A DNA stretch of 63,350 bases, counting the filler, from Reticulomyxa filosa (taxonomy: Eukaryota; Protista; Foraminifera), in the NCBI GenBank assembly GCA_000512085.1. It is 16 parts of 16 records of this genome, joined end to end, with 100 filler letters (N's around TTAATTAATTAA, not from the genome) between each part and the next. Parts side by side here need not be neighbours in the genome. Positions count along the whole stretch, not along the records: positions 27,025 to 33,797 come from ASPP01001162.1; 15 more parts are not named here. One strand, given 5' to 3'. Below, piece after piece: positions 11,848 to 49,048 of the stretch. The notes beneath the pieces are model-generated. The model had not been told where the DNA came from, made no database searches, and saw nothing but the letters and a program-made list of their open reading frames with translations. Every line of letters begins with the position of its first letter. Position 1 is the first letter of the stretch. The position numbers and the translations under genes were made by a program.

Positions 11848-12827
11848 CTAAAAGAAATCATTCAATTCATCATCAAGATCATTGCCATCATTTTCGTGTT
11901 GGTCAAATGCCAACTCGTCATTTGCAAAGCAGTAGCCAGTATCTTCTGAATCGACGTCTAATTCGAATGTTCCCTTCAAATGCGCGTTGTCTCCATTGCT
12001 GTTCAAGACATTGGGATCTAATTCTTGATCCTCATTAATGACCCCAATGTCACTTTGAGTATCCGATTCCACTTCAGCCAATGAAATATCCGGTTGTCTT
12101 CCCATGAAGCCGTCACTGGTATTAATATGGACGTCATTGACAATGGCATTGTCCACAACAATATTGGTATGACTATTTGCGAAATTCGACGAGCGCATTT
12201 GAGACATTTTGGATTTGCGATCGTGTCGATAGTCTCGAATATTTTGGATGGTTTCTGTCATTTTCCTGGACATGTTATCATTGGATTGTCCCAATTCGTG
12301 TATAAGCGCATCGCCTTTGGAATCCAATTCCATCGATACAAGACGTCCACGGGACTTGTTTTTGCCATAATACAAGTTCTGTGAGCCCTGTCGATTTTGT
12401 GTTCTTTGGCTCGTGTGTGTGCGTTGTCTTTGTTGTCGATACATCAGTCCCTGACTGGATCGTGACAATTCAGCTTCATGTCGCGCTTTGTTATCAACTT
12501 TTTCTTCTTCTTCTTCTTCTTCTTCTTCTTCTTCTTTGTCCTTCACTCCCTGATCTTCCTTTTCGTATTCTCGGGAAAGGCGGTGACTTTCATGTCCCAA
12601 GCCAGGCCGCTCCACTTCATTGTCACTTTGCAAAAGGTGTTTTTCTTTGTCGTCGAGAATGTCATCGATCACACCAAGGTATATATCTTTCTGACTACGT
12701 CGAACCGAGTGAGCAGGCGAAGGAGAAGGCAAGTGTCCTCGGTCCGACTCCTTGCGAATGGAAAGAGACACGACGGAGGCATTGCGTGATTTTGAGCCTT
12801 TGCGTTTCTGCAGCACCTCTTGTTCCA

Positions 12828-12873
<46 letters not shown>

Positions 12874-14274
12874 GAATGTGCGACTCCTTTCTTTATCTTT
12901 ATCTTTAATGGAGCTACTCTTATTGATACTGGCAGTACGTCGTCGTTTGTGATCTCTGTTCTCACTTTCACGTTTATCTCGGTTTATGTCCTTGCGTTGC
13001 TTTTTTGTTTCTCTTTTTTTCCTTCTTATCCTTCGATCCTCATCACTATCATTATCATTATCATTATCATTATCACTATCATTATCGTCATTGTCACTAC
13101 TGCCTCGAATAGTACTGGTCGCGTACGACAAGGTCTGCGTGACCGTGGTGGTCATCGTTTCCATCAATCCCAAAGTGTACTTCCACGCGTTGTTGAGCAA
13201 GTTCTGATCAAACACATCGCCGTCGTCGATCGGGATGTTGGAGCCACTGATGGTGGAAGAGGTTGGACGATGCATGTTCACTTTCAATTTTTTGGAGACG
13301 CGTTTGCCGGTCAGTTCTTTGATGTAGTTGCGCATGTTTTCCATTTCGTTGGAGAACTCCAACACCAACTGGAGTTTGGAGCGCATCAGTTCTTTGTACT
13401 GTTGCTTGAGAGCCTCCATTTCGCTCTTGTGTTCGTCCCACTCCGTCTGGGTGACGGGCATGTGCAAGGGGATTGTGGGATCGTCGCTGCGTGCCAAAAT
13501 GGTGCGCAAGTCGGTGTTGGCACGCGACAAACGATTGGTCAATGTGCGTTGATGTTTGTGCAGTGTTTCAATTTCCTTTTCCATCTTGGAAATGGTGGCA
13601 TTCGATTGCGTCTGCACATGTTCTTTGCTGGTTTGCAGCTGTTCGATTTTCTTTTCCAATTCCGGAACACGACTGATTACTTTGGTGAGACGCAGGATCT
13701 CTTCGATCTTGTTCCCATTGTCCAATTGTAGCTCCTTTAATTTATCGCTTTCGCTCCTTTTCAATCGGTCGTTTTGCACTTCCAATAGATGCAAGTCCTT
13801 TTTCAAATGGTTTGCCTCGATTGTCTTTTGGAGCACCACACTGTCATAGTGTTTCGTGGTCTTGTGCAGCTCCTGTCTTTGCTCAAATAGCTGCGCTTTG
13901 AACAAGCTCTCACTTGTATTTACTCCTCCCATTTTCATCAGCTCGTCACACTGCGCTTCGCTGCTCTCGAGGTTTTTCTTCGCTTTTGCAATTTCCATTT
14001 GCAAATGCTTCTTCTCCATTGCATGTTTTTGCTTCATATTTTCCATGTCCGTCTTGAATGTTATTTGCATCTCCAACAACTTGTCCATCTCTTCTTCTTC
14101 TTCTTCTTCTTCTTTCTTTTTTTCTTTCCGACATTGTGAACTTGAAAATGGACGATGACAATGCAGCAATGCTCTTCCTTTTGCCCACTGTTTCTTTGTC
14201 CGTCGGCAAGACCGATGTGGTAGTCACCAACTCGGAGGAGGAGAAAGAAGAGGAAGTAGGTATTGAATTGTTTC

Positions 14275-14319
<45 letters not shown>

Positions 14320-16299
14320 CATACTTGCCATCGTTAACATTGGCATTGGAATTGGTATTGCTATTGCTAATGGCGGATTGAACTTGTGAGCTGGACGATA
14401 CTTCGTTGAAACAAGCTTTGCGTAGCGAATCGCGCGTGGCTTCGAGTTCGGCTTTGATTTGGCTGAAATTGTGCTCGGTCAATTCAGTTTGAGTTTGAGT
14501 TCTTCAAAGCGCAACTGTTCGGCTTCGAGTTTTTTTTGAAGCGCAACGAGTTGTTCGTGCGGGACCATTTGGGAGTGAATCTGTTGTTGTGATCCCTTCA
14601 GCTCGTTCATCAAGTTGAGCGTGTCATGATAATTCTGCAAAGCATTTTTCATAAGCAGCTCGTCTCTTCTCCACGCGTCAAAGACCGAGTCCAAAAACTG
14701 TTTGAGCAATTGTTTGCCGGGGTTGGCTACGACTTTTTCCAAGTCTCGGACTGTCATGGACGAAATAGGGATTGGCAAGCATGTTGAAGAGTGTTCATCA
14801 TCATCATCATCATCATTATGGTTGTTATTGTTGTTGTGATAGTAATCACCAGCAACGTCTTCAGGCAATGGCAATTGGTGTTGCGTAATGTAATGTTCGA
14901 GACATTGCACACGTACTTGAGAGCGTTGGCACTCGGCCATGAGATCGCGAATGACATCCGAGATGATCACCTTCATGTGCTTATACCACTGCGCGAGTTG
15001 ATGTCGACTAATGTGTTCGGGCAGTTGAAGCGCCTCATGACTGAAGATGGAACACTGCAAGTCAAAGTCGAGATTGATGGTCAAATTGACATCCGTACCA
15101 CCACTTTGTGCGAGTTTGCGATTTTCCTTTAGCACGTGGCCCAAGTCGATCTTGAGTGCAATGAGCTGGTCCTTGCATTGCTCCAGCTCTTTCTGCGTAT
15201 CGACAAGCAAGCCATTTCGATTTTCTAGTTGCTTTTCAAAAGTGACTTGATGCTCTTTTATCGCGTATTCATACTTGGCGGTTGTCTCAAGTAACTTGGA
15301 TGTCATCTCTTCTTTTTCTTTGTGCGTCTGACTGGCTTGTTCGCGAATGCCTTCCATCTGGTTCGTCAAGTCCTCGCATTGTTTCACCACATTGTCGTAG
15401 TTCTCCGTCTTTGACTTCATTTGTCTAATCTCTTGCTCACGACGCTCCACAATACTTTGCATTTCCTTCACCGTATCCTCCAATTGCTTGCTGTAGTCGG
15501 TCATTTTTTCCAGCTCTTCCATCGCTCGTTTCAGATCCTTTTCTTGCTCTTCCAACTCCTTCACGTCAAACTTTTGCTTCAACTCTGTCAACTCGTTTCG
15601 CGTCGCTATACACAAATTCTCCAATCTCTCGCTCTCCATTTTCATCTCTGTCATTTGCTTCTCTTTGTCCTCCAATGTCTTATCCTTACTCTGCAATATC
15701 TTCTCATAGTCTTGCATCTTTTGTCGCAATATCGCAAGCTCGTTCTTATATTGTCCATCTTCTTCTCCTTCTTCTTCTTCTGAAGAGGATTTCAATCCCA
15801 ATCCTAACTTCTTCAGTAAACTTGGATTCACTTTATCTATTTCATCCGATCCTCGACTCTCTGGTGTCACCACCGCTGCTGCTGCTGCTCCATGCTTCTT
15901 CAATTCTTCCAATTGCTGCTCCAACTCTTTTCGCTCCTCTCTCTCCAACTTCAATTCTGTATTCAATTTCTTTATCATCTCACCCCACTGCTCACGCTCT
16001 CTGTAAAATTCCGCTTGTTGCTCCAGCTTCTTCTTACTGCTTATCCATTCGCCGTCTTTGTCATTGTCTTTGTCGTTGTTTCTGTCCTCCTTACTCGGGC
16101 CCTTCTCCTGTCTTGAACTTTTCTCTTCTTTCGATCTTTTTGTACTGACGCTCTCACTGTCCTTGTCCTTCTTTGACGAACGCACAGTCCCTTCATCTTG
16201 GCCAGAAAGCTTTCTTTTCGGATCAGTCTTTGACGCCAGTGTGCTGGCCTTCTTTTCACTGTCCTTTGAGGACTCTTGTACTTTCCTTTGCTTTGACAT
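11848..16299 (-). CDS. Large (~1480 aa) coiled-coil / low-complexity protein split by two 1-nt frameshifts
   Basis: ORFs 14479-16299, 13946-14482 and 11848-14169 abut with continuous coding composition. The frame is restored by +1 nt near 14485 and -1 A in the A7 run at 14117-14123. Long E/K/Q/L heptads plus poly-N, poly-E and poly-D tracts. Confidence 0.75.
12829..12873. repeat. (AAT)n microsatellite encoding poly-Asn
   Basis: Pure TTA run. Similar runs occur at ~14276-14318, 37483-37518 and 60224-60262, and (GAA)n runs at ~12502, 14090 and 31118. Confidence 0.95.
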
Positions 16300-26924: not shown

Positions 26925-27124
26925 NNNNNNNNNNNNNNNNNNNNNNNNNNNNNNNNNNNNNNNNNNNNTTAATTAATTAANNNNNNNNNNNNNNNNNNNN
27001 NNNNNNNNNNNNNNNNNNNNNNNNTATATGTATATATATATGTATATGTATATATATATGTATATGTATATATCATATATATTTATGTATCGCCGATACA
27101 TAAATATGAAATAAACAAATATAG

Positions 27125-28543
27125 ACATTACCCGGTGTGCTGCATACTGTATTTCGCAGTAAAAACGCAGAAGTGATCGATAGTGGCTGTCGCTGCGTTG
27201 CAACGTTGATTCGACTGAGCGCAGATCGTCTTCTGAAATGGCAAAATGACGAAAATAGCACGACAAACGGCGGAATGATTCCAGACATACTAAAAATGAT
27301 TGAGAAAATATTACATCCCAGTTTGGCGTGTGGCGACAGTGGAATATTAAAAATAGGAACTTTGTTGAACGAGTTAATATTAAAACTCGGTAAGCATTTG
27401 AATGAAAAGATATTAACCCAATTACTTGTACTTGTCATTCAGCGATTGCACATGGCTTATTTGACTGAGTTGAAACAGCACTTACTCATTGTGTTGCTGC
27501 GATTGGTGTTACTTTACGACAAAAACGTCATTACTTTTTTGTCCAAACACAACAACGGGTATTTGACTGTTCCCGTCTTTGACAAAAAAAGCCTGCTCAG
27601 TACCAACCGAAGCGAGGAAAAAGAGAAAGAAAACGTATCACAACAACAATATACTCAAATTGCGACCCTATCTTTTGTTATGAATGCATGGTGTGAACAT
27701 CATCCCGTGCTCATGTATCCTTATTATATCAAAATCAGTTTGGCAGCCATGTGTAAGCTGTTGCAAATCAAAGTGGAGTGTCTCTACGACATTACCACCA
27801 ATGGCTACCAACTTGACATGGAAAATACTCGACGCACTAGAAGTCAAGGCGCAGGTTACAAAGAAGGAAAAACAGTGGACTCTACAGACACTGGCGGGGA
27901 GAAAAGTAAAAGAGAACAGAGGAGGGAGAGAGAGACAGAACAAAAATTGTTTCAATCTAAATAAACTGTCAATAAAAAAAAAAAAACAGTTCCCTTTTCC
28001 AAAATGCCATTACTAGCAAAATTTCTTCAATTGATCGTACATACTGCAATGGATGACACGGTTTCGCAAGACCCTTTTGGTGATCCGAAAGATCTCGCTG
28101 AAGATGAATACGAAGATGACGAAGACGAATGGGACGAATTCAATGATGTCGAAGACGATGTCGGTAGCACTGGTCCATCTTCGATGGCTAATAAATCACA
28201 TCAATCCCGCGATTCTCGTAAGCCGAATAAAAATTCAGATCACAACAAAGAAAATGACGACGATGACGAAGAATGGATGCCCACTCGGGAAGACTTTCAA
28301 ACCTATAAAAAAGATGCAATTGACAACATGGATGCAATGTTGTATGGATCAACTCCATATAACCAAGAAATTACTGAATGTCCAGAAGCGCTCGATGATC
28401 CATTATATCAAATTAATGTACAATCACATATCACGACTTTCCTCCAAGGTTTTGCAGCCAATGACTCGCAGACGTTCAATAAATTAGTAAAAGAATTAAA
28501 TACTATTGATCAAACTCATTTGAAAAAAATGTTGCAACAATAG
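27125..28543 (+). CDS. IPO9: Importin-9-like protein, C-terminal part
   Basis: Helical repeats, then RRTRSQGA|VPFSKMPLLAKFLQLI (intron 27855-27989), an acidic loop and DDPLYQINVQSHITTFL, as in the importin-9/Kap114 C-terminus. Confidence 0.8.
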
Positions 28544-28912
28544 CTGAAGAGAGAAGCACAAATGCTTACTATTGAGTGGTTTTGTAATGTTTTTGTTTTT
28601 ACTCTTGTTCATGATTGGGGGTTTTTTAAAAATTTGGAAACTATTTATCAAAAGAAGTTGATTTTTATTTATTTATTTTTTTCTTTCAAGGTACAACATT
28701 TTCACACGTAGAATGTCATCAAGTTTCAAAACTTCTAATTATACTTTTTTCAATGCTTGAGCGTAATATGCGTGGATAATTACAGTTAGAACAAATCTGT
28801 GGATTTTCTTTGCTATACACAAGCTCTCACATTGTTTATTCGTTTCATCGGATATCTTGAACGAGACAATTTTTAACCTTTAAAAAACCTGCAATCCTTT
28901 TAATAATAATAA

Positions 28913-31118
28913 ATGGCTTCGAAAACTCCGAGACAACTGAAAAAATCTAAATCAACATTTGGACGAGCAGAAAAAGCAGGAGAAAATGGAGAAGAGAAGG
29001 ATAAAAAAAGTGTAATGTTGAAATTGAAAACGAAAAGCGTAGCAAATGTGGAAGAGAAGAAAGAAAGCAAAAAAAAGAAACCGGATGAAAACAAGACAAA
29101 AAAAGAGAGGAAGAAACCAGTAATGGAGGACCCCAAAAAAGTGATGGGATCAAGAGGACGATCTCCACAGCCGCCTTTGAAAGGCAAAAAAGGAGAATCA
29201 AAAGAAAAAAAATCCACAAAAAAGCCGGGAGATAAGTTGGGATTGAACGCACTGTTGCAAATGCTGAGTCAATGTGAAGACCCATGGGATATGCGCCTAT
29301 TCAAAAAGTTGTTATTTGAATACTTTCGAAACGAAGTAACATTTAACGACCACACACAAATGACAGTAGCAGCCAAATTGAGTTCAGAATGGGTGCAAAA
29401 GGTGTCTTTGCAGATCCAAAACACAGAGGAGTACAAACGACTTACCCCCGAAAATAAAGCCAAATTGGCACAAACTTTGCAATCGTATATTTTGAATGAC
29501 TTGTGGAATCACGAAGAAAATATGAAAGCAATTAAAATGTTAACGGATAAAGACTACGTGCAGCCATTGGAAGAATACATTGGCTTGGGTTAAACTATAA
29601 CATATCCTCGCTTTGCTTCATCCACTCATTCGTTTTGTTTATTTTTAGTTTTTTGTCTGCCCCTTTGTTTATTTACAGAGGACATCAACTATGCAGAAGA
29701 CTTTGGAGATTTAAATGAAAATGACTTTGAGATCGAGCCTGGAGCTGTCCATCAGCTGTTGGAAAGGTTGGAAGATGACGTTGTGGCTCCTGTTTTGTCT
29801 GCTTATGACAACGGATTTTTTGACAATTGCATGAAACGATCCAAAAGAAGGGCGTTTGAATTGGACTTTGCTGGATGTTATTTTATATTTATATGTGCAT
29901 ATGTATATATATATTTATTTTTTTTTTTTTTGAAGTAAAAAAAAATAAATTTGGTCTGAACTTTTTTTGTGGTTGTAATCTATTTGTCGTGTTCCTTCCC
30001 ATGTGAAGATGAAAAGATGGATGACGACGAATTAATTTCGGGCGCTCAAGAATTGGAAGCAGCAATCAAAGGCAAAGGCAAAAGTGAAGAGCACGGCGAC
30101 GGCTTGGAATTGGCCGACGTCGCGGCAACGCTCGCAATGGATTTAACAATGGACTGGACTGAAGGAGATGATGACGACGACAGCGAAAATGAACAAAAGC
30201 GAAGCTCATGGGCAAGCAAACTGAGTTTGGAAGATGGATCCATAGACGGCAAAGATAGCTATCTAACGAAAAACAAAAATGACGATGCTGCATTAGACGC
30301 GCTGATCAAAATACCAGTTTTTCCGAAAAGTGGAAACTCACGCGATCAATTGGATCGTCCTCGACGTAGTGTGCTGCAGCTTATGTCAATGGACGAAAAG
30401 AAGACTGTGACACCCACAGAAAAGATTGATGAACAGGATGACGACAATGACGACATTGGATTGGACAACGTCGATATGATGGATTCTGGCATGGATCCAG
30501 AAATCGAGTTGAATTTGGGCATTAATTTGGGTATCAATGCAAAGTCTGCGTCCTCGTCCAATCTCGATGCCAGAAAGGCCATTTTCGAAGATAAGAAATT
30601 GGATGTCCCACCCAAAAAATCCCTCTGGGATCCGCCCACTCTCGAAACAAACGACGACGAAGAGGAAGAGCATACACATGAGGAAGACGAACACGAAGCA
30701 CATCCTGAAGAAGATGACATTGAAGAAGATATCAGTGCCGTGATCACGCCTCAAGGCAAAATCACCTGGAAAGACCAACTTGTCGATGCAGAGGCTGAAG
30801 CCGAAATTGAAATAAATGACGACGAACCCGAGATTTCTCTCAAAAAACAAGACGATCTATTGGAAGACGAAGAATTCGTAGAAGACATGGAACTGGAGTC
30901 TGTACGGGTCAGAAAGGACATTGGAAAAGGACTGAGAATCGAAGTGGACGCTGACGCCGATGCAGAAGCAGAGGCTGATGCTGATATTGAAGCAGAGGCG
31001 GAAATGGAAGTGGAGCCAGATGATATCATCGAACATGAGATGCCAGAAGAGGAAGAAGAGGCTGTTGAGGAAGAAGAAGCTGTGGAGGAGGAAGAGGCTG
31101 TTGAAGAAGAGGCCGTGG

Positions 31119-31149
<31 letters not shown>

Positions 31150-33424
31150 GAAAAAGAAGGAAGACACATTTGAGAAATTGGGTTGGAATGAAACACACTA
31201 TTATCGAAATCATTACCGTGTATTGAATAGACGATTTAAAGATGCACGATATCGACCAGTGGGATGGAAATGTATATTCCATCATCGACATGGAGATGAA
31301 AAGAATTTTAATAAAAGTTTTGTAACAGAAGAAATGCCAATAATAGCATATGAAGAATCATATGGAAAAAATTTATGGTGGTTTAGTGCAAAAATGGATA
31401 TGTATGGAGGATATAAAAGAAAAGGATTACAAGATTATCAAATAAAAATGGAAGATGAAATGAGTGAAGATAATGATAAAATAAATGATAATCATAATAA
31501 TAATAAATATCAAATAAAAGATATACAATTACCTACATTTGTATATGATTTACGTGATATTGAAAAATATTATTGGTTTCCTTTTTTAAATGATGAATCA
31601 CATGGTGTAAAAAATAATGAACAAAAAGAAGCAGAAAATTATTTTGCAGAAAATGAATCAATAGATAATGAAACAAATGGTGATGAATTTAATAATATAA
31701 AATGGTATACATATCGTATTCGTATATGGAAATATTTAGGACCAAAAAGAAGAATGGAAAATGAGAAAGCATTTGATCGTTGGTATGGTAGTGTAGATGA
31801 TGAAAATTGGGGATTAATGATAGATCATATATATTTAAGAAATGCAGTAATAACACAAAAAGCAACAAAAGGATTTGTAATGAAATATCATATATGGAGA
31901 AAAGATTATGATGAAAGAACATTTGGTGGTTATGATAGTGGTTATGAAGAATTTAAAGATGATTATAAACCATTTAAAGAAGAAATGGATTTTACATATG
32001 ATAATACATATAATAAAAGAGCTAATGATGAATTAGAACATGTAATGGAACATTTTAATAGTGAAGATACACGTATTTTACCATATACATTAAATGATAA
32101 AGGAAGTATATGTGCATTAAGTTTAGATGATATAGAAGAAACAGATGTATTTATAATAGGTTGTCCAGATATACAAACACAAGAATGGTATCGTGATTGT
32201 AGAATACAAATAGATACATTTGTTCCAGAATTAATGAATTTATCAATAATATCAAAACAAGATATACGTTGTGAAAGAGAAGATTATGGTGATGTAAGAG
32301 GACGTCCAAGAGTAAGAGATGATATGATAATAAATAAATGTAATCCAGTTATAGAATATGCATATGGTAATTGTAAAAATGATAAAACAATGCAAGTTAA
32401 ATTTTATCGTAAATCTGGTGAATGGTATCCTATGCAATGTGAACATCAAATTCGTGTACCTTTATTTTATAATACATATATAACTAATATGCAAAAATTT
32501 GAAGATCCAGAAGATAGTGATTATAGTGCTAGAATGGATTATGAATGGGGATTTGATAGTGATTATGCTAAACAAAGAATTGGTAAAGCACCTTGGTTAC
32601 ATTGTAGTGCTTTATTTTTTAATAATTTTGCTTATAATCATTTTGGTATGAATTTAGGTATGAGAAAATCTATTTATGCTATGACATATGAAATGGATAA
32701 TAATTGGATTGGTGAATGGGATGATAAAGATAAAGATGAATGGACTATTTGTTTTGGTTTTACATATCCTATGGCACAATTAAATCCTTCTTATCTTATT
32801 TATAAAAAAGATACTTTTGAAGTTAAAATAGCACCTAAAATTATTTCTGAAAATAAAGATCTTAAAGATAAACCAGAATTTAGAGAAGAACGTCTTCAAA
32901 TTAAACTTAAACATATTGGTAGTAAAGATACTATACTTCTTGATACTGTACTTCGTAGTGAACAAGATTTTTCACATAATAATACTAATGAAGATGAATA
33001 TTTTGTTATTACACATCCACAAACTAATGATACTATTATGAAAAGTTGGCCTAAATGCTTTTGGCAAAATTCTCATATTGTTTTTATTACTAAACTTTTA
33101 GATGGTACTTGTAATGTTTATCTTGATGGAATCTTAGTTAATTCTTGTTCTATTCGTAGAAAATCTAAAATTAAATCTGAATGTCTTGGTGAAGAAGAAT
33201 GTTGGAGATTTGGTCATGGTATTCGTGGTGATAATACTGATAATATTGATTTTGCTTTTCATGGATATTTATTTGATCTTCTTCTTCTTCCTATTTCTCT
33301 TCCTCCTTTTGATCTTCAAGGTCTATTTCGTTTTTATTTGGCTAGAAGACATCTTCATTTATTATATTTGGAAGATTTTTGGTCTCGTCGTTATTCTGAT
33401 GGCTCTTCTTCTCTTCCTTTTTAA
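28913..33424 (+). CDS. Large (~1430 aa) unknown protein: Lys-rich N-terminus, acidic linker, aromatic-rich globular region, C-terminal LamG/ConA-like domain
   Basis: Introns 29589-29678 and 29877-30008 join ORF 28913-29593 to 29969-33424 in phase. The C-terminal WQNSHIVFITK..TCNVYLDG..WRFG..FHGYLFDL resembles LamG-like jelly rolls. Confidence 0.7.
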
Positions 33425-33897
33425 AATTTCAATGTTTCACCTTTTTTTTTTTTTCGACAAGTTCATCAAGCTTATCTATTGCATTCTTTTTTTTTTGTAA
33501 ATTGTGTTGATTTGCTCTTTTCTTCAACTTATCGTGCTGTCTTCTTGAAATTTCAGATTGATCTTTTGCATTTCGACTAATCAGTGCGGAAATTTAAAAA
33601 AACTATCAATTATTTCAATATAGGGCTTCAAATTTTTATTGAAAACGAAAACAATTTTTTTTTTCAATTAAAACATCATCAAAACGTATGTCAATTAATT
33701 TTTTTATAATAATTTTTGAAAAAAAAATTATCTATCACGATATTCTCTAACGAGAAGCAGCCCCCCAGGTTCGCCCTCCCCGACCCAAGCCAACTGCNNN
33801 NNNNNNNNNNNNNNNNNNNNNNNNNNNNNNNNNNNNNNNNNTTAATTAATTAANNNNNNNNNNNNNNNNNNNNNNNNNNNNNNNNNNNNNNNNNNNN

Positions 33898-43549: not shown

Positions 43550-46500
43550 TTACATGGTTGAATCGGCACGATTCAAAGTATGTCCAGTTTTGGTACCCGA
43601 TTTTCCACTTCTGGAAGCGTTGTTGGTTGATAAATCGCTTCCAGCCATGTTTGAACTGTCTGTGCTGGACATGTTGGAATCTTCCGAATTTTGGTCTTTG
43701 CCTTTGGTCTTGACTTCTTCTCCATGGAACCATATCATGTAATACTTGCGCCAAAATATGAAACCCAGCACTGCTTCCAATGCAATCCATGAAGCAATTC
43801 CTCCCAGTACTTGTTTTGCCTCAGGAGGCACCGAATTGATGACACTGATAGGGACCATAAACAACATGATGAGTGCCAATGTATAAATGGCAGCTCCCAA
43901 CCAAAAGGACTCATTGAAATTTTTGGGGACATCTCTTACACCAACGGCCAATCGAACAAGCCACAAAAGAAGGATCACTCCGCAAGCCAAGCTAATTGTC
44001 AAAAAGATGTTATTCAGAGAGCAGTATTCTTTGTTGGTGCCATCGGATTCAACTTGCCATTCAGTCCAGTTGGATTGTACAAACGTCCATGCCAGCAAAT
44101 ATCCCAGTATGACCAGAGAGGGCAGAACAAGGAATAAAAGGAACAATCGTGTGGTAGTGAAGTTGAATCGTTGGAATTTCTTCTTGGCAGTGTAGAATAT
44201 CATATAGATGCGCCAAGTCTTGCCAGTGATGGGTGCCATGATGAAGATAAAAGAGAAATGTAACAGCCATACCATTAACTGACAGGGTGCATCTTGTGGC
44301 ATGAAAGGCAGCAAAATGATGGAAACACTCAGCAACAAACATCCGAATAAGATAATTACCAAAAACGGAGGAGTGGCACCTCGGATAATAGGTGACTCAC
44401 GATACCACCACATGAGGAGAGCAGTGGTGATCACAGAGAATATGCCGACAATACCAACGGCGGAGTTGATAGCAATTGTCCACAACTGAGGAGTATACAC
44501 ATGGTTGGAATACCTTGCCGTTACACTTTGGTTGAATGAATATGGTTGAGTGTAAATATCAAGTGTCAAATCCAATTTTTTGTTATTGTGGCGAATGCTG
44601 TCTCCTGGCGTGATGAAAAATTCCAAGGAAGCGGTTCCTTTCGAAAATGTGTCTTCATATCTGCCCGTCAATTTTACATCTGCTCCTGAAATCGAGACCG
44701 ATAACACCGTGGTTTGCTCCAATTGCGTCACGATTTGTCCATAGGCATCGAGCAATATGCCTTGAATTTTTACTTTTTGCTTTTGATTGAGACCTTTGCT
44801 AAGATCGGTACCATAGGTCAACTTCAATTTCTGTGGTCCTGTGCCTGTGTCACTTCCGAATGCAGCACCATTGTTTTGGTATTGACAATTGCTACTATTG
44901 GAACCACAAACAGGACATTTGCCTTGCTCGTCTATGTAGATTGCTCCACCACTGTATTGTGCCTTGTTCTCTTGGAATTGCACATAGAAAAAATCAAAGG
45001 AAGGACAGCTTTGTAACCACAAGCCACCGCCATTGTCTGCATTGTTTTTCACAAAGGTCGAATTGAGCAACTGGATTAAAGGAACATCACATCCCATTCC
45101 TCCACCCGATTTGGCGGAATTTTGCGAAAATGTGGACGCGCTATCTTGTATCCAGCCTTGAAGAACGTGGATACCTCCGCCCTCCATATTTGCATTGTTT
45201 GAATCGAAATTGTTTGAATTCAATTCAATACTTCCCATTTGCACGTACACAGCGCCTCCATTCATATTGGCCTGGTTTTTGGACAGAGAATTGGAAGACA
45301 GCATCAACAGAGGACTCGCCGACCATTCAAAAAAGTTTGAGCTCGCGGAGGAGGTAAGTGCAATAGCGCCTCCATTGTCGGCAGAATTGTTATCGAGGGT
45401 GGAGTTTAACAGCGTAACGTTCATTCCCCACAACGGTGCATGCGTAAGGAAGATTCCTCCACCAGTGGTAGCTGCATCGTTGTTTGCAAACGTGCATTGC
45501 TCCAACAAAATATTGCCTCCGGTTATCGTTAAGCCTCCACCTGAGCTTCCCGCGATATTTTCAGAAAGCGTGACATTCAATAAATAGTGAAATCCACTGG
45601 ACACATCAATCATTATGCCTGCACCTGTTTGCGATGCACTGTTGTTCACAATCCTTGAATCATTCATTTCAAATCTGCATCCATGGATGTAAAGTCCTCC
45701 TCCTTGCTGGGCCGAGTTGGTGGTGATCACCGTCCTTGAAATGTAATTGGGCTTTGCTGCACAAATAAAGTAACCATCCCCGTCAAACAAAAAGCCTCCA
45801 TTCGATTTTGCAATATTATCCTGGGCCAAGGTGTTCTCGATATTGTAATTTCCTTTGTCAATAAATATGGCTCCACCTTGGGCAGATGCAAAGTTTTGTT
45901 GGAATGTGCAATTACTCAAAAACAATCGGAAAGCAGGAGCATAAAATCCAATGGCTCCTCCTTGATCCGCATGGTTTTCCTGGAACGTGCAGTTGGTAAA
46001 GACCACGTCTCCGTAGTTGTGAAAGGTAGCCCCGCCAAGCTTGTCACCACTGTTGCGATAGAACAGGCTATTCTGTATTGTCAATGCACTTGCTGACGAA
46101 CTCAACGCTCCTCCTCCAAAAGGTCTTATTATTTCATATTGTGTGAACATGTTACAACTCATCAAAAACAAAGCAACAAAAAAATAGCATATAAACATAT
46201 ATGTATAAATTACAAACCCGTGGTTTCCAGAAAAGATTGAGTTAGTAATTATTGCAGCACCCACTTCCAAGTGGACACCAGCCCCATAGTTGATTGCCGA
46301 ATCACTCATGAAATTAGAATTCAAGATGGAACTCGAAATCATAACCGAGTTCACTACATACAAAAACAAAGCTCCGACAGACACTCCGAGAGTGTTGGTG
46401 GAATTGACGTGAGTCAAGTCAGCGGTATTGGTCCAAGTAACGATCATACAGCCACCAATGGCATATGTATCAGCGCAAGTAAACCCATCCACGGTTAGAA

Positions 46501-49048
46501 CCCCACTGTTTTCCATAACTAGACACGCCGCAAAACCGCTGGACACATTTTGGCAGAGTATGTTTTGGAGATTAAGTGATGAAATAAAGAGTGCCTCTAC
46601 ACAAGCAGTAGCAAGGGCAAAGGAATTTTTGCACGTGACGCTGTCCGAGCTCACATAAGAAATGCCATTGGCATAAAAGCACGACGACTCAAAGTTGTAA
46701 ACAGTATCACAAGTAATGCTTTGGGAAGTGAGCGTTTGGCCACCGGCGGCGAATATCGACATCTGGGAGTCGATCGCATTATCAATTGATATATCATTGA
46801 GTATAGCCGAATAAAAAGAGAGCACATATACACAGCCAGCGACTTTCCCGGTCGTGTCCGTACAAGTAATATGCTGCACGTCAATGGAAGTGATGGTATA
46901 CGTATACGTATATACGCAGCCCGAAAAAAGAGAAGCCGAGGTTTGATAGCATCCCACATTGGAGATCGTAACGCCATAGTTATACCTAGATCCGACACAA
47001 GCGCTTTCCCCGCCGCTCGTGCCTTCGCAATAGACAGTATCTACCGTTACATAATTAACTTGTTCGGTCCATATGCATGCGGACACATTTCCTCTGATCG
47101 TAGTACAGGTAAGGCCATAAGCGTACACTTGACCTCCATACGCGGCAGCAATTGGCGAGTAATGTGCTGTGAAGCGTCCACTCATTTCAATATCGGATAT
47201 ATGCATAGTATCGAAGTATTGCACATCGAGTGCTTTTTCCACAGACGAACTACCATTCCAGACTACGTTTGAAGCATACAGTAATTGTATATTGCGAAAG
47301 CAAAAAGTAGATTGGTCACAAGATAAAATGGGAGATCCTGAAACAAACGTCAAGCTACTTTGCAGAGACGTGTTAGTCAACTCCACAGCCCAGCCATAGG
47401 TATAGAAATCGCTTCCGCCGATCAGGTGCACAAAGGATATTCCATTGTTGATTGTGTGGACTTGATCAATGGTCAACCGCCCATTCTGAGAAAGAGGGGA
47501 ATTGATCCACACTCCATGCGTCTCCGAGCGTTTCGCAAAAGTAAGCAAGATACGAGACAGCCCCAACTGCACAAGGCCTGGGTTGTACGTGTTATTGAAC
47601 ATGGACAAGTCCAAGGTAATCAGTTGGCCAATTCGCGGATCGGTATCACTTTTCGCCACGCTGACATTCAAATCCTGCACTTGGACCGCGACGTTGATGT
47701 TGAGTTGACCGACGTACAAATGCACCAATATGCTGTTTTGCGCAAAGACGCGACATTGCGACGGCCTGTCACAACCGACTGTGACACTGGTATTGCGATT
47801 GGTATACCATATGTACTGAGCATTGGACATGTTCCAATCCGTGGCAAAATACACCAAAGACGTGGCATTGACGGAGGTCCAAATGGCCTTTTCGACAGCG
47901 TCTTCAAAGCTCGTGGTCTGATAGATGAAAGAAAAGGAGGAGTTATAATACGCATCAATGGAATTAAAGACCAGAAATTTCTCGACATTTGTCACATTAG
48001 TAATGAGTTGTGTCCACGTGACAGTTGACATGTCCAAATACTGCAAATCACTCGAGCGGCCGTCATTGTTGGAAATGCCACCAAACATCCACAAAATGTT
48101 CTTTTTGAAAATGCTGGCCGATTGTGCCAAGGGTACATACAAACGTGGCCCAAAGCCAGCAACGGACAGTGTGGTGAGATTGTACACTTCACTATTGATC
48201 ACGTTAATGGCACAACGATACAACTCATCAGCTTGCAGACATCCTCCAATAATCAAAATATGCTCCTCTTCATTTGCATCCGGCATTGCAAAAACACCGG
48301 TGCCGAATCTCGGGATTTGCAACTGGGCTTGAAGCACCGCTTCTCCGGTCGAACGATCCACTGACCATATATCCGATAAAGGCTGGCTGGTTACATAGTC
48401 CAATCCTCCAAACATCAAAATCTTATTCGTTGATGCGCTCCACACACACGATCCGTAAAATGCAAATGACGATAACGATATTTCCTCGGTTACATTCGAC
48501 CATGTCTCGTCCATCGTGTTATATTCCAAACATCTTGAATAGTGCTCGCCGCTTTCCTTCACGCCCAAAATGTTCACAAAGATCGCCGATCCTCCGTCCG
48601 AACACAATGTCACTCCTTTGACTGTTGCCCATGCGATACTTGTCTCTTGTGCTATCTCTGTCCTCGCGGTTACGTTGTATATATGCCATGTTATATCTTG
48701 ACTCCCTCCTACTTTCAGGTAGTAAATCGCATCTCCAATTGCTACGCTCTTGTGTTCTAACATCACGTTATCCACTTGGTTTGCTGTACTCCCGTTCACT
48801 GTCGTTGCTTGACTGTGCTTCGCCAATTCCACGTCCGTTATATCGAATTCAATGAATTTATCATTCACATCATCGCTTTGTCCAGACTCGCCGCCTATCA
48901 TCACAATCTTTTCATTACTTGCCTCGTATGCGATCATCGCACCGTACAACCAGTACGACAACGCGTCTTCCGTCAAGTTAAATTGTGCTATTGTCGCTTT
49001 TGAAGGAGCGAGAACAGCTAACGCTGTTGCCAATGCTAGCAAAAACAT
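43550..49048 (-). CDS. Giant class C (7tm_3) GPCR-like receptor with Kelch propeller and Pmp-like parallel beta-helix ectodomain
   Basis: Signal peptide, Kelch GG motifs (MIGG, MFGG, IIGG) and many FxxN..GGAI repeats. The 7TM carries SPIIRGATPPF, GKTWRIYMIF and VRDVPKNFNES. In-frame 93-nt intron at 46125-46217. Confidence 0.88.
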   Translation of the reverse strand: MFLLALATALAVLAPSKATIAQFNLTEDALSYWLYGAMIAYEASNEKIVMIGGESGQSDDVNDKFIEFDITDVELAKHSQATTVNGSTANQVDNVMLEHKSVAIGDAIYYLKVGGSQDITWHIYNVTARTEIAQETSIAWATVKGVTLCSDGGSAIFVNILGVKESGEHYSRCLEYNTMDETWSNVTEEISLSSFAFYGSCVWSASTNKILMFGGLDYVTSQPLSDIWSVDRSTGEAVLQAQLQIPRFGTGVFAMPDANEEEHILIIGGCLQADELYRCAINVINSEVYNLTTLSVAGFGPRLYVPLAQSASIFKKNILWMFGGISNNDGRSSDLQYLDMSTVTWTQLITNVTNVEKFLVFNSIDAYYNSSFSFIYQTTSFEDAVEKAIWTSVNATSLVYFATDWNMSNAQYIWYTNRNTSVTVGCDRPSQCRVFAQNSILVHLYVGQLNINVAVQVQDLNVSVAKSDTDPRIGQLITLDLSMFNNTYNPGLVQLGLSRILLTFAKRSETHGVWINSPLSQNGRLTIDQVHTINNGISFVHLIGGSDFYTYGWAVELTNTSLQSSLTFVSGSPILSCDQSTFCFRNIQLLYASNVVWNGSSSVEKALDVQYFDTMHISDIEMSGRFTAHYSPIAAAYGGQVYAYGLTCTTIRGNVSACIWTEQVNYVTVDTVYCEGTSGGESACVGSRYNYGVTISNVGCYQTSASLFSGCVYTYTYTITSIDVQHITCTDTTGKVAGCVYVLSFYSAILNDISIDNAIDSQMSIFAAGGQTLTSQSITCDTVYNFESSCFYANGISYVSSDSVTCKNSFALATACVEALFISSLNLQNILCQNVSSGFAACLVMENSGVLTVDGFTCADTYAIGGCMIVTWTNTADLTHVNSTNTLGVSVGALFLYVVNSVMISSSILNSNFMSDSAINYGAGVHLEVGAAIITNSIFSGNHGFVIYTYMFICYFFVALFLMSCNMFTQYEIIRPFGGGALSSSASALTIQNSLFYRNSGDKLGGATFHNYGDVVFTNCTFQENHADQGGAIGFYAPAFRLFLSNCTFQQNFASAQGGAIFIDKGNYNIENTLAQDNIAKSNGGFLFDGDGYFICAAKPNYISRTVITTNSAQQGGGLYIHGCRFEMNDSRIVNNSASQTGAGIMIDVSSGFHYLLNVTLSENIAGSSGGGLTITGGNILLEQCTFANNDAATTGGGIFLTHAPLWGMNVTLLNSTLDNNSADNGGAIALTSSASSNFFEWSASPLLMLSSNSLSKNQANMNGGAVYVQMGSIELNSNNFDSNNANMEGGGIHVLQGWIQDSASTFSQNSAKSGGGMGCDVPLIQLLNSTFVKNNADNGGGLWLQSCPSFDFFYVQFQENKAQYSGGAIYIDEQGKCPVCGSNSSNCQYQNNGAAFGSDTGTGPQKLKLTYGTDLSKGLNQKQKVKIQGILLDAYGQIVTQLEQTTVLSVSISGADVKLTGRYEDTFSKGTASLEFFITPGDSIRHNNKKLDLTLDIYTQPYSFNQSVTARYSNHVYTPQLWTIAINSAVGIVGIFSVITTALLMWWYRESPIIRGATPPFLVIILFGCLLLSVSIILLPFMPQDAPCQLMVWLLHFSFIFIMAPITGKTWRIYMIFYTAKKKFQRFNFTTTRLFLLFLVLPSLVILGYLLAWTFVQSNWTEWQVESDGTNKEYCSLNNIFLTISLACGVILLLWLVRLAVGVRDVPKNFNESFWLGAAIYTLALIMLFMVPISVINSVPPEAKQVLGGIASWIALEAVLGFIFWRKYYMIWFHGEEVKTKGKDQNSEDSNMSSTDSSNMAGSDLSTNNASRSGKSGTKTGHTLNRADSTM

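What the first reader, a model, noticed from the sequence alone, without database searches (positions are those of the whole stretch)
31310..33424. A ~2-kb GC3-null domain with an A-to-T codon-ending gradient inside an intact exon
Seen: the first ~1.1 kb of this exon uses GAC/GAG/ATC/GCC freely, like the other intact genes here. After the (GAA)n tract and a ~150-nt transition zone, G/C-ending synonymous codons vanish; reading ~580 codons from 31310 to 33055 by eye I found one (GAG near 31763). The frame stays open and is rich in TGG and CAA. Endings are A on the left (ATA, GGA, ACA, GCA, TTA) and T on the right (ATT, GGT, ACT, GCT, CTT), crossing over near 32400-32560. The domain is bracketed by (GAA)n on the left and CTT-rich sequence on the right, so it is inverted-symmetric. 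Equally long exons (11848-16299, 43550-49048) show none of this. Inference: a positionally defined, strand-asymmetric mutational or chromatin domain overlies a selected gene. Candidates are heavy cytosine modification/deamination, a replication initiation or termination zone, or a low-GC centromere-like unit.
Basis: partly seen in the sequence, partly recalled or inferred. Interest (0 to 1): 0.85.

Follow-up and report, generated by a model that had tools for sequence, protein, structure and literature searches.

The report
Foraminifer gene half written without G/C-ending codons
In a gene of the freshwater foraminifer Reticulomyxa filosa, the conserved 750-codon half uses almost only A- or T-ending codons (first A, then T), while the rest of the same reading frame and the neighbouring genes use mixed codons. 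Related organisms share the pattern, so it is real, is being maintained, and bears on why foraminifera have such extreme codon bias.

Summary
The piece is a whole contig of the Reticulomyxa filosa draft genome. In ORF 29969-33424, GC3 is about 40-47% up to a Glu-rich repeat (31049-31164). It then falls through a roughly 150-nt border zone to 6 G/C-ending codons out of 663 (1 of about 548 between 31310 and 33055). A-endings (about 78%) give way to T-endings (75-95%) at about 32396.

It is not an assembly chimera. RNA-derived contigs from three other organisms and studies carry the AT-rich part at 93-99% identity. One of them runs from mixed codons into the null zone within unique sequence.

The null zone coincides with the only conserved protein module; its single distant homologue uses ordinary codons. 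It ends at the stop codon, and the 3' flank has 28-30% GC. CpG-containing CGT/CGA codons are kept. The skew change is purine to pyrimidine, not the replication type. Differences between relatives are mostly A<->T. So deamination, a replication origin and a centromere-like unit are not supported.

Best reading: a third-position-specific, actively maintained "extreme-AT codon dialect". This dialect is known species-wide in other foraminifera, but here it is confined to one gene module. The cause of the A-to-T switch is unresolved. How common such modules are in the genome could not be tested.

The parts
27125..28543 (+). Neighbouring gene 1 (NCBI: hypothetical protein RFI_01126, partial, Reticulomyxa filosa). 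Two exons, intron 27852-27986. Mixed codon usage (GC3 0.26-0.43).
   Evidence: identity and name. joint 27851^27987 GT..AG in run X3. for GC3.
28913..29871 (+). Neighbouring gene 2, or the 5' exons of the same gene. Exon 1 is 28913-29587, the intron is 90 nt, and exon 2 runs from 29678. Mixed codon usage (GC3 0.22-0.32). A GT at about 29872 and an AG at 30007-30008 would join it in frame to the long ORF; this is read from the sequence and is not shown by RNA.
   Evidence: spliced joint 29587^29678 in run X1.. Exon 2 resembles the ORF upstream of the homologue in L002 (z = 7.2).
30017..31048 (+). Acidic, low-complexity N-terminal part of the 1135-aa ORF (35% D+E). Mixed codons (GC3 0.38-0.47). 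No homologue found.
   Evidence: Not aligned to P0001.
31049..31164 (+). Glu-rich tandem repeat, (GAGGAAGAAGAGGCTGTG)n then (GAA)n, with mixed codon endings. An in-frame ATG lies at 31040. This is the left bracket of the domain.
   Evidence: The X1 contig covers it from 31088, with no listed difference up to 31161.
31160..31309 (+). Border zone. Homology with P0001 begins here. GC3 is 16% in the window and about 35% in relative X1.
31310..32395 (+). R1: the GC3-null, A-ending half (ATA 27:3 over ATT, ACA 15:0, GCA 10:1, TTA only for Leu). Purine fraction 0.64.
32360..32408 (.). Support interval of the A-to-T codon-ending change point (best estimate 32396). It lies in a poorly conserved linker about 60 codons upstream of the best-conserved C-terminal block.
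32396..33421 (+). R2: the GC3-null, T-ending half (ATT, ACT, GCT, CCT, TCT, GGT; Leu CTT 18 against TTA 10). Purine fraction 0.48. Five G/C-ending codons reappear in the last 120 codons. This is the best-conserved protein block; a LamG/ConA-like fold is only a lead.
33268..33319 (+). CTT/TCT/CCT-rich tract encoding DLLLLPISLPPFDL, imperfectly complementary to the (GAA)n tract. These residues align with conserved residues of P0001.
   Evidence: I1-I8, I20..
33422..33424 (+). TAA stop codon. The third-position G/C depletion ends here.
33425..33797 (.). 3' flank. T-rich on the + strand (A-T skew -0.37 to 33600), but 28-30% G+C, so not GC-null. No Rfam match and no long ORF.

Best explanation
The region is the conserved C-terminal module (about 754 codons, 31160-33421) of a lineage-restricted protein gene of the foraminifer Reticulomyxa filosa. 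The module is written in the extreme A/T-ending synonymous-codon 'dialect' described species-wide for at least 11 other foraminiferal genera. Here the dialect is confined to one module of one ORF, and every other coding sequence on the contig uses mixed codons.

Shown:
- The depletion of G/C is specific to codon third positions (plus the first position of Leu in the left half).
- It starts where protein homology starts and ends at the stop codon.
- It is shared by relatives at up to 7% DNA divergence.
- Its left border lies at a different place in a relative.

Inferred: the null state is actively maintained. G/C-ending codons are removed, either by selection on synonymous codons or by a biased conversion-like process that tracks the coding unit. 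A<->T changes at the same sites pass freely.

On top of this sits a regional purine-to-pyrimidine change of the coding strand at about 32.4 kb (A-endings to T-endings). It does not depend on local sequence context. Its cause is not established. Candidates are a junction of two sub-modules with different histories, or a transcript-end or antisense-related asymmetry.
For: Source and reality. The contig is ASPP01001162.1 of GCA_000512085.1, which is R. filosa. The AT-rich part is present in assemblies of three other organisms and studies. X1 has a 2391-nt contig covering 31088-33425 at about 95% identity. X3 has pieces at 95-99%. X6 has a 1634-nt contig at about 93%. X1 and X3 also show GT..AG-spliced joints of genes 1 and 2, so they are RNA-derived and come from kin of this genome.

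Third-position specificity. G/C-ending codons are 6 of 663, against 28-30% G+C in the adjacent 3' flank and GC12 of about 35-38%. CTT is preferred over TTA in the right half, so the rule there is 'T at position 3', not 'minimise GC'.

Coincidence with the protein module. The single homologue among 1.84 billion representatives (P0001, E = 9e-6; BLASTP 5e-19) aligns from the first codons of the zone to the C-terminus and not to the acidic part. Its own gene has GC3 of about 50% and no A/T switch.

Maintenance. 63 of 108 window-X6 differences are A<->T (A>T 42, T>A 21), and at most 21 are A/T to G/C at any codon position. A<->T is also the largest class in X3. Differences from X1 run at 11% in 31162-31517 but about 2.9% in the core, against about 8% in gene 2.

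Labile border. In X1, GC3 is 20/57 in 31160-31339 and 5/53 in 31340-31519. The window has 9/57 and 0/54.

Fit to the published foraminiferal pattern (PMC11980380). Species medians of GC4 go down to 2.3%. UTRs stay at 25-45% GC. Silent-site GC is higher near both CDS ends, as seen here at 31160-31310 and in the last 120 codons. 3' UTRs prefer T.

The A/T choice is regional. It is independent of the next base and of local composition at positions 1-2.
Against: Only one locus was seen. I could not sample other R. filosa contigs, so I cannot say whether such modules are common, unique, or the rule.

Translational selection normally acts on whole genes and on all genes of a genome. It does not explain a border inside an ORF unless the module is translated on its own (there is an in-frame ATG at 31040), which is untested.

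The published work reports that in foraminifera with intermediate GC4, highly expressed genes are richer in GC4, not poorer.

Amino-acid composition is also AT-shifted: FYMINK residues are 37%, against 27% in the homologue. That points to a mutational component.

The right half violates the positive A-T silent-site skew reported for all foraminifera, and neither half matches all the published codon preferences (ATA instead of ATT on the left; CCT and ACT instead of CCA and ACA on the right).

Continuity of 30017-31045 with the module is shown only by this assembly's open frame, not by reads. The substitution classes come from a summary table of assembled contigs, not from polarised alignments.
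Confidence: 0.5

Rival explanations
1. A regional mutational domain. A stretch of about 2.3 kb has very strong AT-biased mutation, or lacks GC-biased gene conversion (as in the 5'-to-3' GC3 decline of grass genes). It drives every unconstrained site to A/T. Purifying selection on the protein keeps positions 1-2, and a strand asymmetry (transcription or replication) sets A against T.
For: Amino-acid composition is shifted to AT-rich codons (FYMINK 37%, against 27% in P0001). Synonymous first positions of Leu are all T in the left half. The left border is graded and sits at a different place in relative X1, as a spreading or retreating process would give. Purine content falls at all three codon positions towards the 3' end and continues into the flank.
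Against: The adjacent non-coding flank has 28-30% G+C against 0.9% at third positions, so the depletion stops within a few bases of the stop codon. CTT is preferred over TTA on the right, and CGT/CGA persist. Skews of 0.6-0.9 at silent sites are far above known replication or transcription asymmetries (my knowledge). GC skew moves opposite to the replication signature. Silent differences between relatives are A<->T rather than the transitions expected from ordinary mutation.
Confidence: 0.2
2. Foreign or mosaic origin. The module, or each of its two halves, came by transfer, introgression or gene conversion from a genome or paralogue that uses the extreme-AT dialect throughout, for example another monothalamid foraminifer. 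It was fused behind a resident acidic region. The A-ending and T-ending halves are two donor tracts.
For: The codon dialect equals that of whole genomes of other foraminifera, including early-diverging monothalamids. The borders are sharp. The step-like A/T change at 32360-32408 lies in a poorly conserved linker. The A>T differences in all three relatives (42:21, 12:5, 17:12) would fit different mosaic break points.
Against: The exon upstream (gene 2, exon 2) resembles the ORF upstream of the homologue in L002, so the neighbourhood looks inherited rather than newly assembled. The null state is kept in lineages up to 7% diverged with no sign of amelioration in the core, so maintenance is needed in any case. 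No donor-like sequence was found in protein, viral or metagenome searches.
Confidence: 0.15
3. Artefact. The contig is a mis-join at the GAA/GAG repeat between an R. filosa gene and a gene of a co-cultured AT-biased eukaryote.
For: R. filosa cannot be grown free of other eukaryotes (PMC3079666). The assembly is very fragmented, with N50 of 3.6 kb. The junction lies at a low-complexity repeat. No laid contig covers 30000-31000.
Against: An independent contig of a related organism (X1) runs from the mixed-codon repeat, through a stretch with GC3 of about 35%, into the null zone within unique sequence. X1 and X3 carry both the AT module and the mixed-codon neighbours, at similar identities. The frame stays open across the junction for 1151 codons.
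Confidence: 0.05
4. One reading: cytosine modification or deamination (RIP-like), a replication origin or terminus, or a centromere-like low-GC unit.
For: There is a sign change of A-T skew, low GC, and inverted-symmetric brackets.
Against: CpG is kept in 21 Arg codons, and CA and TG are not depleted. TGG and CAA are intact. Transversion-requiring codons dominate. GC skew changes in the wrong direction for replication. The sequence is an expressed, conserved CDS without satellite repeats.
Confidence: 0.05

Closest known systems
[quoted passage not shown]
   Same: G/C at silent sites is near zero (species medians down to 2.3%). UTRs are much less biased (25-45% GC). Silent-site GC is higher near both CDS ends. 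3' UTRs are T-preferring. The authors conclude that neutral substitution bias alone is insufficient.
   Different: There it is a property of whole transcriptomes of a species. Here it is confined to one module of one ORF, next to mixed-codon sequence in cis. GC3 here (0.2-0.9%) is below even the most biased species median. The right half has T>A, against the A>T silent-site skew reported for all foraminifera. R. filosa itself was not analysed in that paper.
Intragenic 5'-to-3' GC3 decline in grasses and other plants, attributed to GC-biased gene conversion near gene starts (e.g. PMC4316631, seen only as title and abstract; otherwise my knowledge)
   Same: GC3 is higher in the 5' part of a transcription unit than in the 3' part.
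   Different: The plant gradients are gradual and genome-wide, never reach zero, and have no A/T switch.
Strand-specific codon usage around replication origins (e.g. Borrelia; skew N-domains in mammals) - my knowledge
   Same: There is a sign change of A-T skew along the DNA at silent sites.
   Different: The replication signature enriches G and T together. Here G-C skew falls while T-A rises. The magnitude is far larger, and the scale is 1 kb rather than tens of kb or more.
RIP and AT-isochores in fungi - my knowledge
   Same: These are sharp-edged AT-rich blocks next to normal DNA.
   Different: RIP gives transitions only, depletes CpA/TpG, destroys reading frames and affects non-coding DNA equally. 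None of this is seen here.
Codon autocorrelation / tRNA re-use within genes (Cannarozzi et al. 2010) - my knowledge
   Same: There are long runs of the same synonymous codon (22 TTA in a row).
   Different: All amino-acid families switch at the same place, which a per-tRNA effect does not predict.

Membership tests
Extreme-AT codon usage of foraminifera (PMC11980380) | G+C at silent or fourfold sites below 15% (extreme taxa 2-4%) | tested here: met
   6/663 G/C-ending codons in 31310-33421, and 15/711 over the whole module.
Extreme-AT codon usage of foraminifera (PMC11980380) | UTR or flank G+C much higher than silent-site G+C | tested here: met
   The 3' flank has 28-30% G+C. UTR limits are not mapped.
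Extreme-AT codon usage of foraminifera (PMC11980380) | Silent-site GC raised near both CDS ends | tested here: met
   9/57 G/C-ending codons in 31160-31339, and 5 in the last 120 codons, against 1 of about 548 between them.
Extreme-AT codon usage of foraminifera (PMC11980380) | Positive A-T skew at silent sites; ATT>ATA, CCA>CCT, ACA>ACT | tested here: inconclusive
   The left half has A>T with CCA and ACA as expected, but ATA 27:3 over ATT. The right half has T>A, with ATT as expected but CCT and ACT.
Extreme-AT codon usage of foraminifera (PMC11980380) | Property of the whole transcriptome of the species | tested here: not met
   Gene 1, gene 2 and the 5' third of the same ORF have GC3 of 0.22-0.47. 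Only this contig could be examined.
Replication origin/terminus skew switch | G-C and T-A skews change sign together, in coding and non-coding DNA | tested here: not met
   A-T skew goes from +0.22 to -0.11 to -0.37, while G-C skew falls from +0.45 to +0.15 to -0.12. This is a purine-to-pyrimidine shift.
Cytosine deamination / RIP-like hypermutation | CpG or CpA/TpG depletion, transitions only, no regard for reading frame | tested here: not met
   There are 21 CGT/CGA codons. CA observed/expected is 1.58 and 0.82, and TG is 1.5 and 1.23. The frame is intact. ATA, ACA and GCA dominance needs transversions.
Centromere-like low-GC unit | Non-coding, repeat-based or gene-free AT-rich core | tested here: not met
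   It is an open, conserved CDS present in spliced RNA-derived assemblies, with no satellite. CENH3 binding is not testable here.
LamG / concanavalin A-like domain (C-terminal block of the protein) | Match to Laminin_G profiles or a jelly-roll fold | tested here: inconclusive
   Pfam gives no match at E <= 1. PDB sequence search gives nothing. The AlphaFold model has pLDDT of 32 and is unusable. The only lead is an Atlas feature similarity of 0.89 to Laminin_G_3 clusters.

The most novel reading that the evidence does not exclude
Reticulomyxa and its kin carry cis-delimited 'codon-dialect' domains. A locally acting mechanism that tracks a coding unit (for example transcript-guided or conversion-based) purges G/C from third positions of chosen modules, and its border migrates over evolutionary time. 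The unexplained extreme AT bias of whole foraminiferal transcriptomes would then be the genome-wide end state of this local process, rather than the result of a global mutation bias or tRNA pool.
Probability: 0.2. Interest if true: 0.85.

Novelty: new variant of a known kind. Interest (0 to 1): 0.62.

Why it matters
[quoted passage not shown] It was studied only as a between-species trait.

Here the extreme dialect and the ordinary one sit side by side in one reading frame. They share the same nucleus, tRNA pool and replication and repair background. That arrangement excludes genome-wide causes for this case and gives a natural within-gene control.

The border that differs between relatives, and the restriction of silent changes to A<->T, are directly measurable. 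They turn the question into one that comparative and population data can answer.

If the locus proves unique, it is a curiosity of one orphan gene. If modules like it are frequent in the 40,000 R. filosa genes, it points to a new kind of local control of synonymous composition.

Tried and rejected
Homologues. The word-indexed protein search of the module and of its C-terminal block found nothing. The search with the gene 1 ORF returned only the R. filosa protein itself, so other R. filosa contigs could not be sampled. The exhaustive HMMER search found one distant homologue only. The window's protein is not in the clustered collection.

Fetching DNA of relatives. A metagenome scan with protein patterns and one with a degenerate 53-nt pattern found nothing. 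The viral-contig scan found nothing, so there is no support for a viral origin.

Annotation. Pfam, PDB and Rfam gave no matches. The structure model is unusable (pLDDT 32), so no fold search was run.

RNA-structure idea. I asked whether segregating A and U lowers folding, or whether the GAA/CTT brackets close a loop. Native local and global folding energies do not differ from synonymous-codon shuffles (z = 1.4; -394.9 against -393.4 +/- 8.3 kcal/mol). No support.

Context ideas. The A/T choice does not depend on the next base or on local composition at positions 1-2.

Other items. No long ORF lies on the other strand or in another frame, so dual coding is not supported. BLASTP of gene 2 exon 2 against the ORF upstream in L002 gave nothing, although Smith-Waterman with shuffles gives z = 7.2; I treat this as moderate support. 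Raw RNA reads of run X10, which carries the same species label as X1, laid almost nothing, so that label is probably a host or a generic label. I did not build or search a joined spliced product; exons were searched apart, by reference.
Full report
**What the piece is.** The 6773 bases (window 27025-33797) are the whole of contig ASPP01001162.1 of assembly GCA_000512085.1. A paper names that assembly as Reticulomyxa filosa (PMC6783311). NCBI calls the first gene product 'hypothetical protein RFI_01126, partial [Reticulomyxa filosa]'. R. filosa is a naked freshwater foraminifer. Its draft genome is very fragmented (50,809 scaffolds, N50 3.6 kb, mean intron 87 nt; PMC13746701).

NCBI annotates three genes on the + strand:
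- 27125-28543 (444 aa)
- 28913-29938 (311 aa)
- 30017-33424 (1135 aa, single exon)

**The observation.** I counted codons in the frame of ORF 29969-33424.
- From 30017 to 31159, third positions are A 34%, C 23%, G 21%, T 22%.
- A Glu-rich tandem repeat, (GAGGAAGAAGAGGCTGTG)n followed by (GAA)n, occupies 31049-31164.
- G/C-ending codons then thin out: 9 of 57 degenerate codons in 31160-31339.
- Against the lowest GC3 seen in neighbouring coding sequence (0.22), the binomial tail is 10^-60. Even against 3% it is 10^-3.6.

At sites where A and T are both synonymous, the T share is 0.16, 0.26 and 0.24 in three bins left of 32396, and 0.75, 0.78 and 0.95 right of it. The log-likelihood ratio is 53. 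The best step is at 32396 (support 32360-32408), but a sigmoid up to about 300 nt wide fits as well. Every codon family changes together:

| Left half | Right half |
|---|---|
| ATA | ATT |
| ACA | ACT |
| GCA | GCT |
| CCA | CCT |
| TCA | TCT |
| GGA | GGT |
| TTA (22 in a row) | mostly CTT |

It is better described as a step followed by a further rise than as a smooth gradient.

- X1 has a 2391-nt contig covering 31088-33425 at about 95% identity, with 21 further bases that continue the Glu-repeat.
- X3 has five pieces between 31419 and 33225 at 95-99%.
- X6 has a 1634-nt contig covering 31682-33270 at about 93%.
- X1 also carries exon 1 joined to exon 2 of gene 2 (29587^29678, GT..AG, 90 nt skipped). 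X3 carries the spliced joint of gene 1 (27851^27987). These assemblies are therefore RNA-derived and come from kin of this genome, and the AT-rich part is transcribed there.
- Raw RNA reads of X10, which carries the same species label as X1, laid almost nothing. That label is probably a host or a generic label.

I entered the 40 differences that the tool listed for 31162-31517, all but one of them X1's, into the window sequence. X1 then has 20 of 57 G/C-ending codons in 31160-31339 and 5 of 53 in 31340-31519. The window has 9 of 57 and 0 of 54. So an independent contig passes from ordinary to null codon usage inside unique sequence, which a mis-join at the repeat cannot explain. What no laid contig shows is the continuity of 30017-31045 with the module. 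That rests on this assembly and on the 1151-codon open frame.

**What the null zone encodes.** Pfam finds nothing in any product of the piece beyond one sub-threshold match (DUF285, E 0.0065, below the curated cut-off) to the second-exon ORF of gene 1. An exhaustive HMMER search of 1.84 billion representatives with the 754-aa zone found a single protein: P0001, 975 aa, E = 9e-6, with pairwise BLASTP 5e-19. It comes from a 4-kb transcript-like contig of JGI sample 3300017273 (L002). I could not name the organism.

The alignment runs from the first codons of the zone (DTF...) to the C-terminus. Its conserved blocks include LPTFV, KWYxYRxRxWK, FFxNF, LYKKDxFEV, SHxV...YLDG and FHGY. It does not include the acidic part. 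The null zone is therefore the conserved module of the protein, and its left edge is the edge of homology.

P0001's own gene has GC3 near 50% and no A/T change along its length. Of the 40 listed differences in the first 120 codons of the module, all but one of them X1's, 22 are synonymous and 18 fall in non-synonymous codon changes, as expected under purifying selection on the protein. A LamG/ConA-like fold for the C-terminal block is only a lead: Atlas feature similarity is 0.89, the structure model failed at pLDDT 32, and PDB gave no match.

- *Deamination or RIP-like mutation.* The zone keeps 21 CGT/CGA codons. CA and TG are not depleted, and TGG and CAA are intact. The dominance of ATA, ACA, GCA, CCA and GTA on the left cannot arise by transitions from ordinary codon usage. 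Not supported.
- *Replication origin or terminus.* A-T skew goes from +0.22 (left half) to -0.11 (right half) to -0.37 (flank). Over the same stretch G-C skew falls from +0.45 to +0.15 to -0.12, and purine content goes from 0.64 to 0.48 to 0.35. That is a purine-to-pyrimidine change, not the joint G and T enrichment of leading strands. Its size at silent sites is far above known replication asymmetries (my knowledge). Not supported.
- *Centromere-like unit.* This is an open, conserved, transcribed CDS without satellite repeats. Not supported.

More generally, a regional mutational or chromatin domain should treat non-coding DNA alike. Yet the 3' flank has 28-30% G+C next to third positions with 0.9%. 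The depletion ends at the stop codon. On the right, CTT is preferred over TTA, so the rule there is 'T in position 3', not 'as little GC as possible'.

**Evidence that the state is maintained.** Between the window and X6, 63 of 108 listed differences are A<->T transversions (A>T 42, T>A 21). At most 21 are A/T-to-G/C at any codon position. A<->T is also the largest class in X3 (17 of 39). Silent sites therefore do change, but almost only within the A/T alphabet.

Divergence from X1 is 39 differences in the 356 nt at the border (11%), about 56 in the remaining 1908 nt (2.9%), and 60 in 737 nt of gene 2 (8%). Silent sites in the core thus evolve more slowly than in the neighbouring gene. I infer that G/C-ending codons are removed, by selection on synonymous codons or by a biased conversion-like process. 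These numbers come from a summary of assembled contigs, not from polarised alignments.

**Comparison with what is known.** Cote-L'Heureux et al. (mBio 2025, PMC11980380) report the following:
- Per-species median GC at fourfold sites in foraminifera ranges from 2.3% to 76%.
- Eleven genera, including early-diverging monothalamids, lie below 15%.
- UTRs stay at 25-45% GC, so substitution bias is insufficient as an explanation.
- In AT-biased taxa, silent-site GC is higher near both CDS ends.
- 5' UTRs prefer A and C, and 3' UTRs prefer T and G.
- Silent sites show A>T in all foraminifera.

The module here behaves like a whole CDS of such an AT-biased species. GC3 is near zero, it is raised at both ends, and the 3' flank is T-rich at 28% GC.

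What differs:
- The trait is not species-wide here. Gene 1 (GC3 0.26-0.43), gene 2 (0.22-0.32) and the 5' third of the same ORF (0.38-0.47) use mixed codons.
- GC3 is lower than any reported species median.
- The right half has T>A.
- Neither half fits all the published preferences (ATA on the left; CCT and ACT on the right).
- R. filosa was not analysed in that paper.

I found no paper describing compositional mosaics within R. filosa genes. The genome paper itself is not held.

**The A-to-T change.** The choice does not depend on the following base: about 78% A on the left and about 85% T on the right, whatever the next base. It also does not depend on local composition at positions 1-2 (log-likelihood -146 to -171, against -120 for side alone). 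So it is regional.

Folding the RNA gives no sign that separating A from U lowers structure, or that the GAA/CTT brackets matter. Local MFE has z = 1.4 against synonymous-codon shuffles, and global MFE is -394.9 against -393.4 +/- 8.3. No long ORF on either strand overlaps the region.

The change point lies in a poorly conserved linker about 60 codons before the best-conserved block. In all three relatives, A>T differences outnumber T>A. Both facts would fit a mosaic of two tracts with different histories, or a break point that moves. An asymmetry tied to the transcript's 3' end or to antisense transcription is equally open. I could not test either, and the cause stays unexplained.

**Verdict.** The finding is real, strong and not an assembly artefact as far as the available data reach.

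The best-supported reading (about 0.5) is a third-position-specific, actively maintained extreme-AT codon dialect confined to the conserved module of a mosaic gene, with an evolutionarily labile left border.

| Rival | Confidence |
|---|---|
| Regional mutational domain | 0.2 |
| Mosaic or foreign origin | 0.15 |
| Chimera | 0.05 |

The largest gap is that I could not look at any other R. filosa contig, so the frequency of such modules is unknown. It decides between 'curiosity of one orphan gene' and 'a local mechanism behind foraminiferal codon bias'.

I built no joined spliced product. Exons were searched separately, by reference.

Noticed in passing
window 29678-29871 and 30009-30016; L002:353-817: Gene 2 and the long ORF may be one gene. 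A GT after ...GCTGGAT (about 29872) and the AG at 30007-30008 would join exon 2 in frame to the ORF (…AG|Y|EKMDDDE…). Exon 2 (INYAEDFGDL…VVAPVLSAYDNGFF) resembles the ORF that lies upstream of the homologue P0001 on contig L002 (Smith-Waterman z = 7.2 against shuffles; BLASTP reported nothing). No RNA evidence for the joint was obtained.
   Followed up: partly
L002:255-300 and L002:1040-1085: On the homologue's contig, a motif of about 45 nt (…GATTTGTTGATCAATGMCGAGACKTAAACGGATACAT…) occurs twice, once before each of the two larger ORFs. It may be a repeated regulatory or processing element.
   Followed up: no
window 33757-33797: The last 41 bases or so of the contig are abruptly GC-rich (…gcagccccccaggttcgccctccccgacccaagccaactgc), unlike everything before. 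This may be an assembly-end artefact or a junction with unrelated sequence.
   Followed up: no
window 33429-33527 (- strand): A short K/E-rich open frame on the minus strand (…LKKRANQHNLQKKKNAIDKLDELVEKKKKVKH*) ends 5 nt from the stop of the long ORF. If it is the last exon of a convergent gene, its transcript could overlap the T-ending half in antisense. Its codons have mixed endings (8 of 32 G/C).
   Followed up: no
window 27025-27090: There is a (TATATG)n / (TATATGTATATATATATG)n microsatellite at the contig start. Similar TA-rich runs occur in the putative intron 29878-29922.
   Followed up: no
window 31470-31517 and run X6 loose end at 31682: The Asn/Asp-rich low-complexity stretch (ATA/AAT repeats) carries small indels in X1 and X3. 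In X6, an (AAT)n run replaces the sequence upstream of 31682. Microsatellite-type length variation therefore occurs inside the null zone.
   Followed up: no
runs X1-X9: Contigs 93-99% identical to this R. filosa gene turn up in small runs labelled as four different organisms in four studies. Large RNA-seq runs with the same label as X1 lack the gene. Reticulomyxa-like amoebae may be unrecognised passengers in samples of other, perhaps freshwater, organisms.
   Followed up: no
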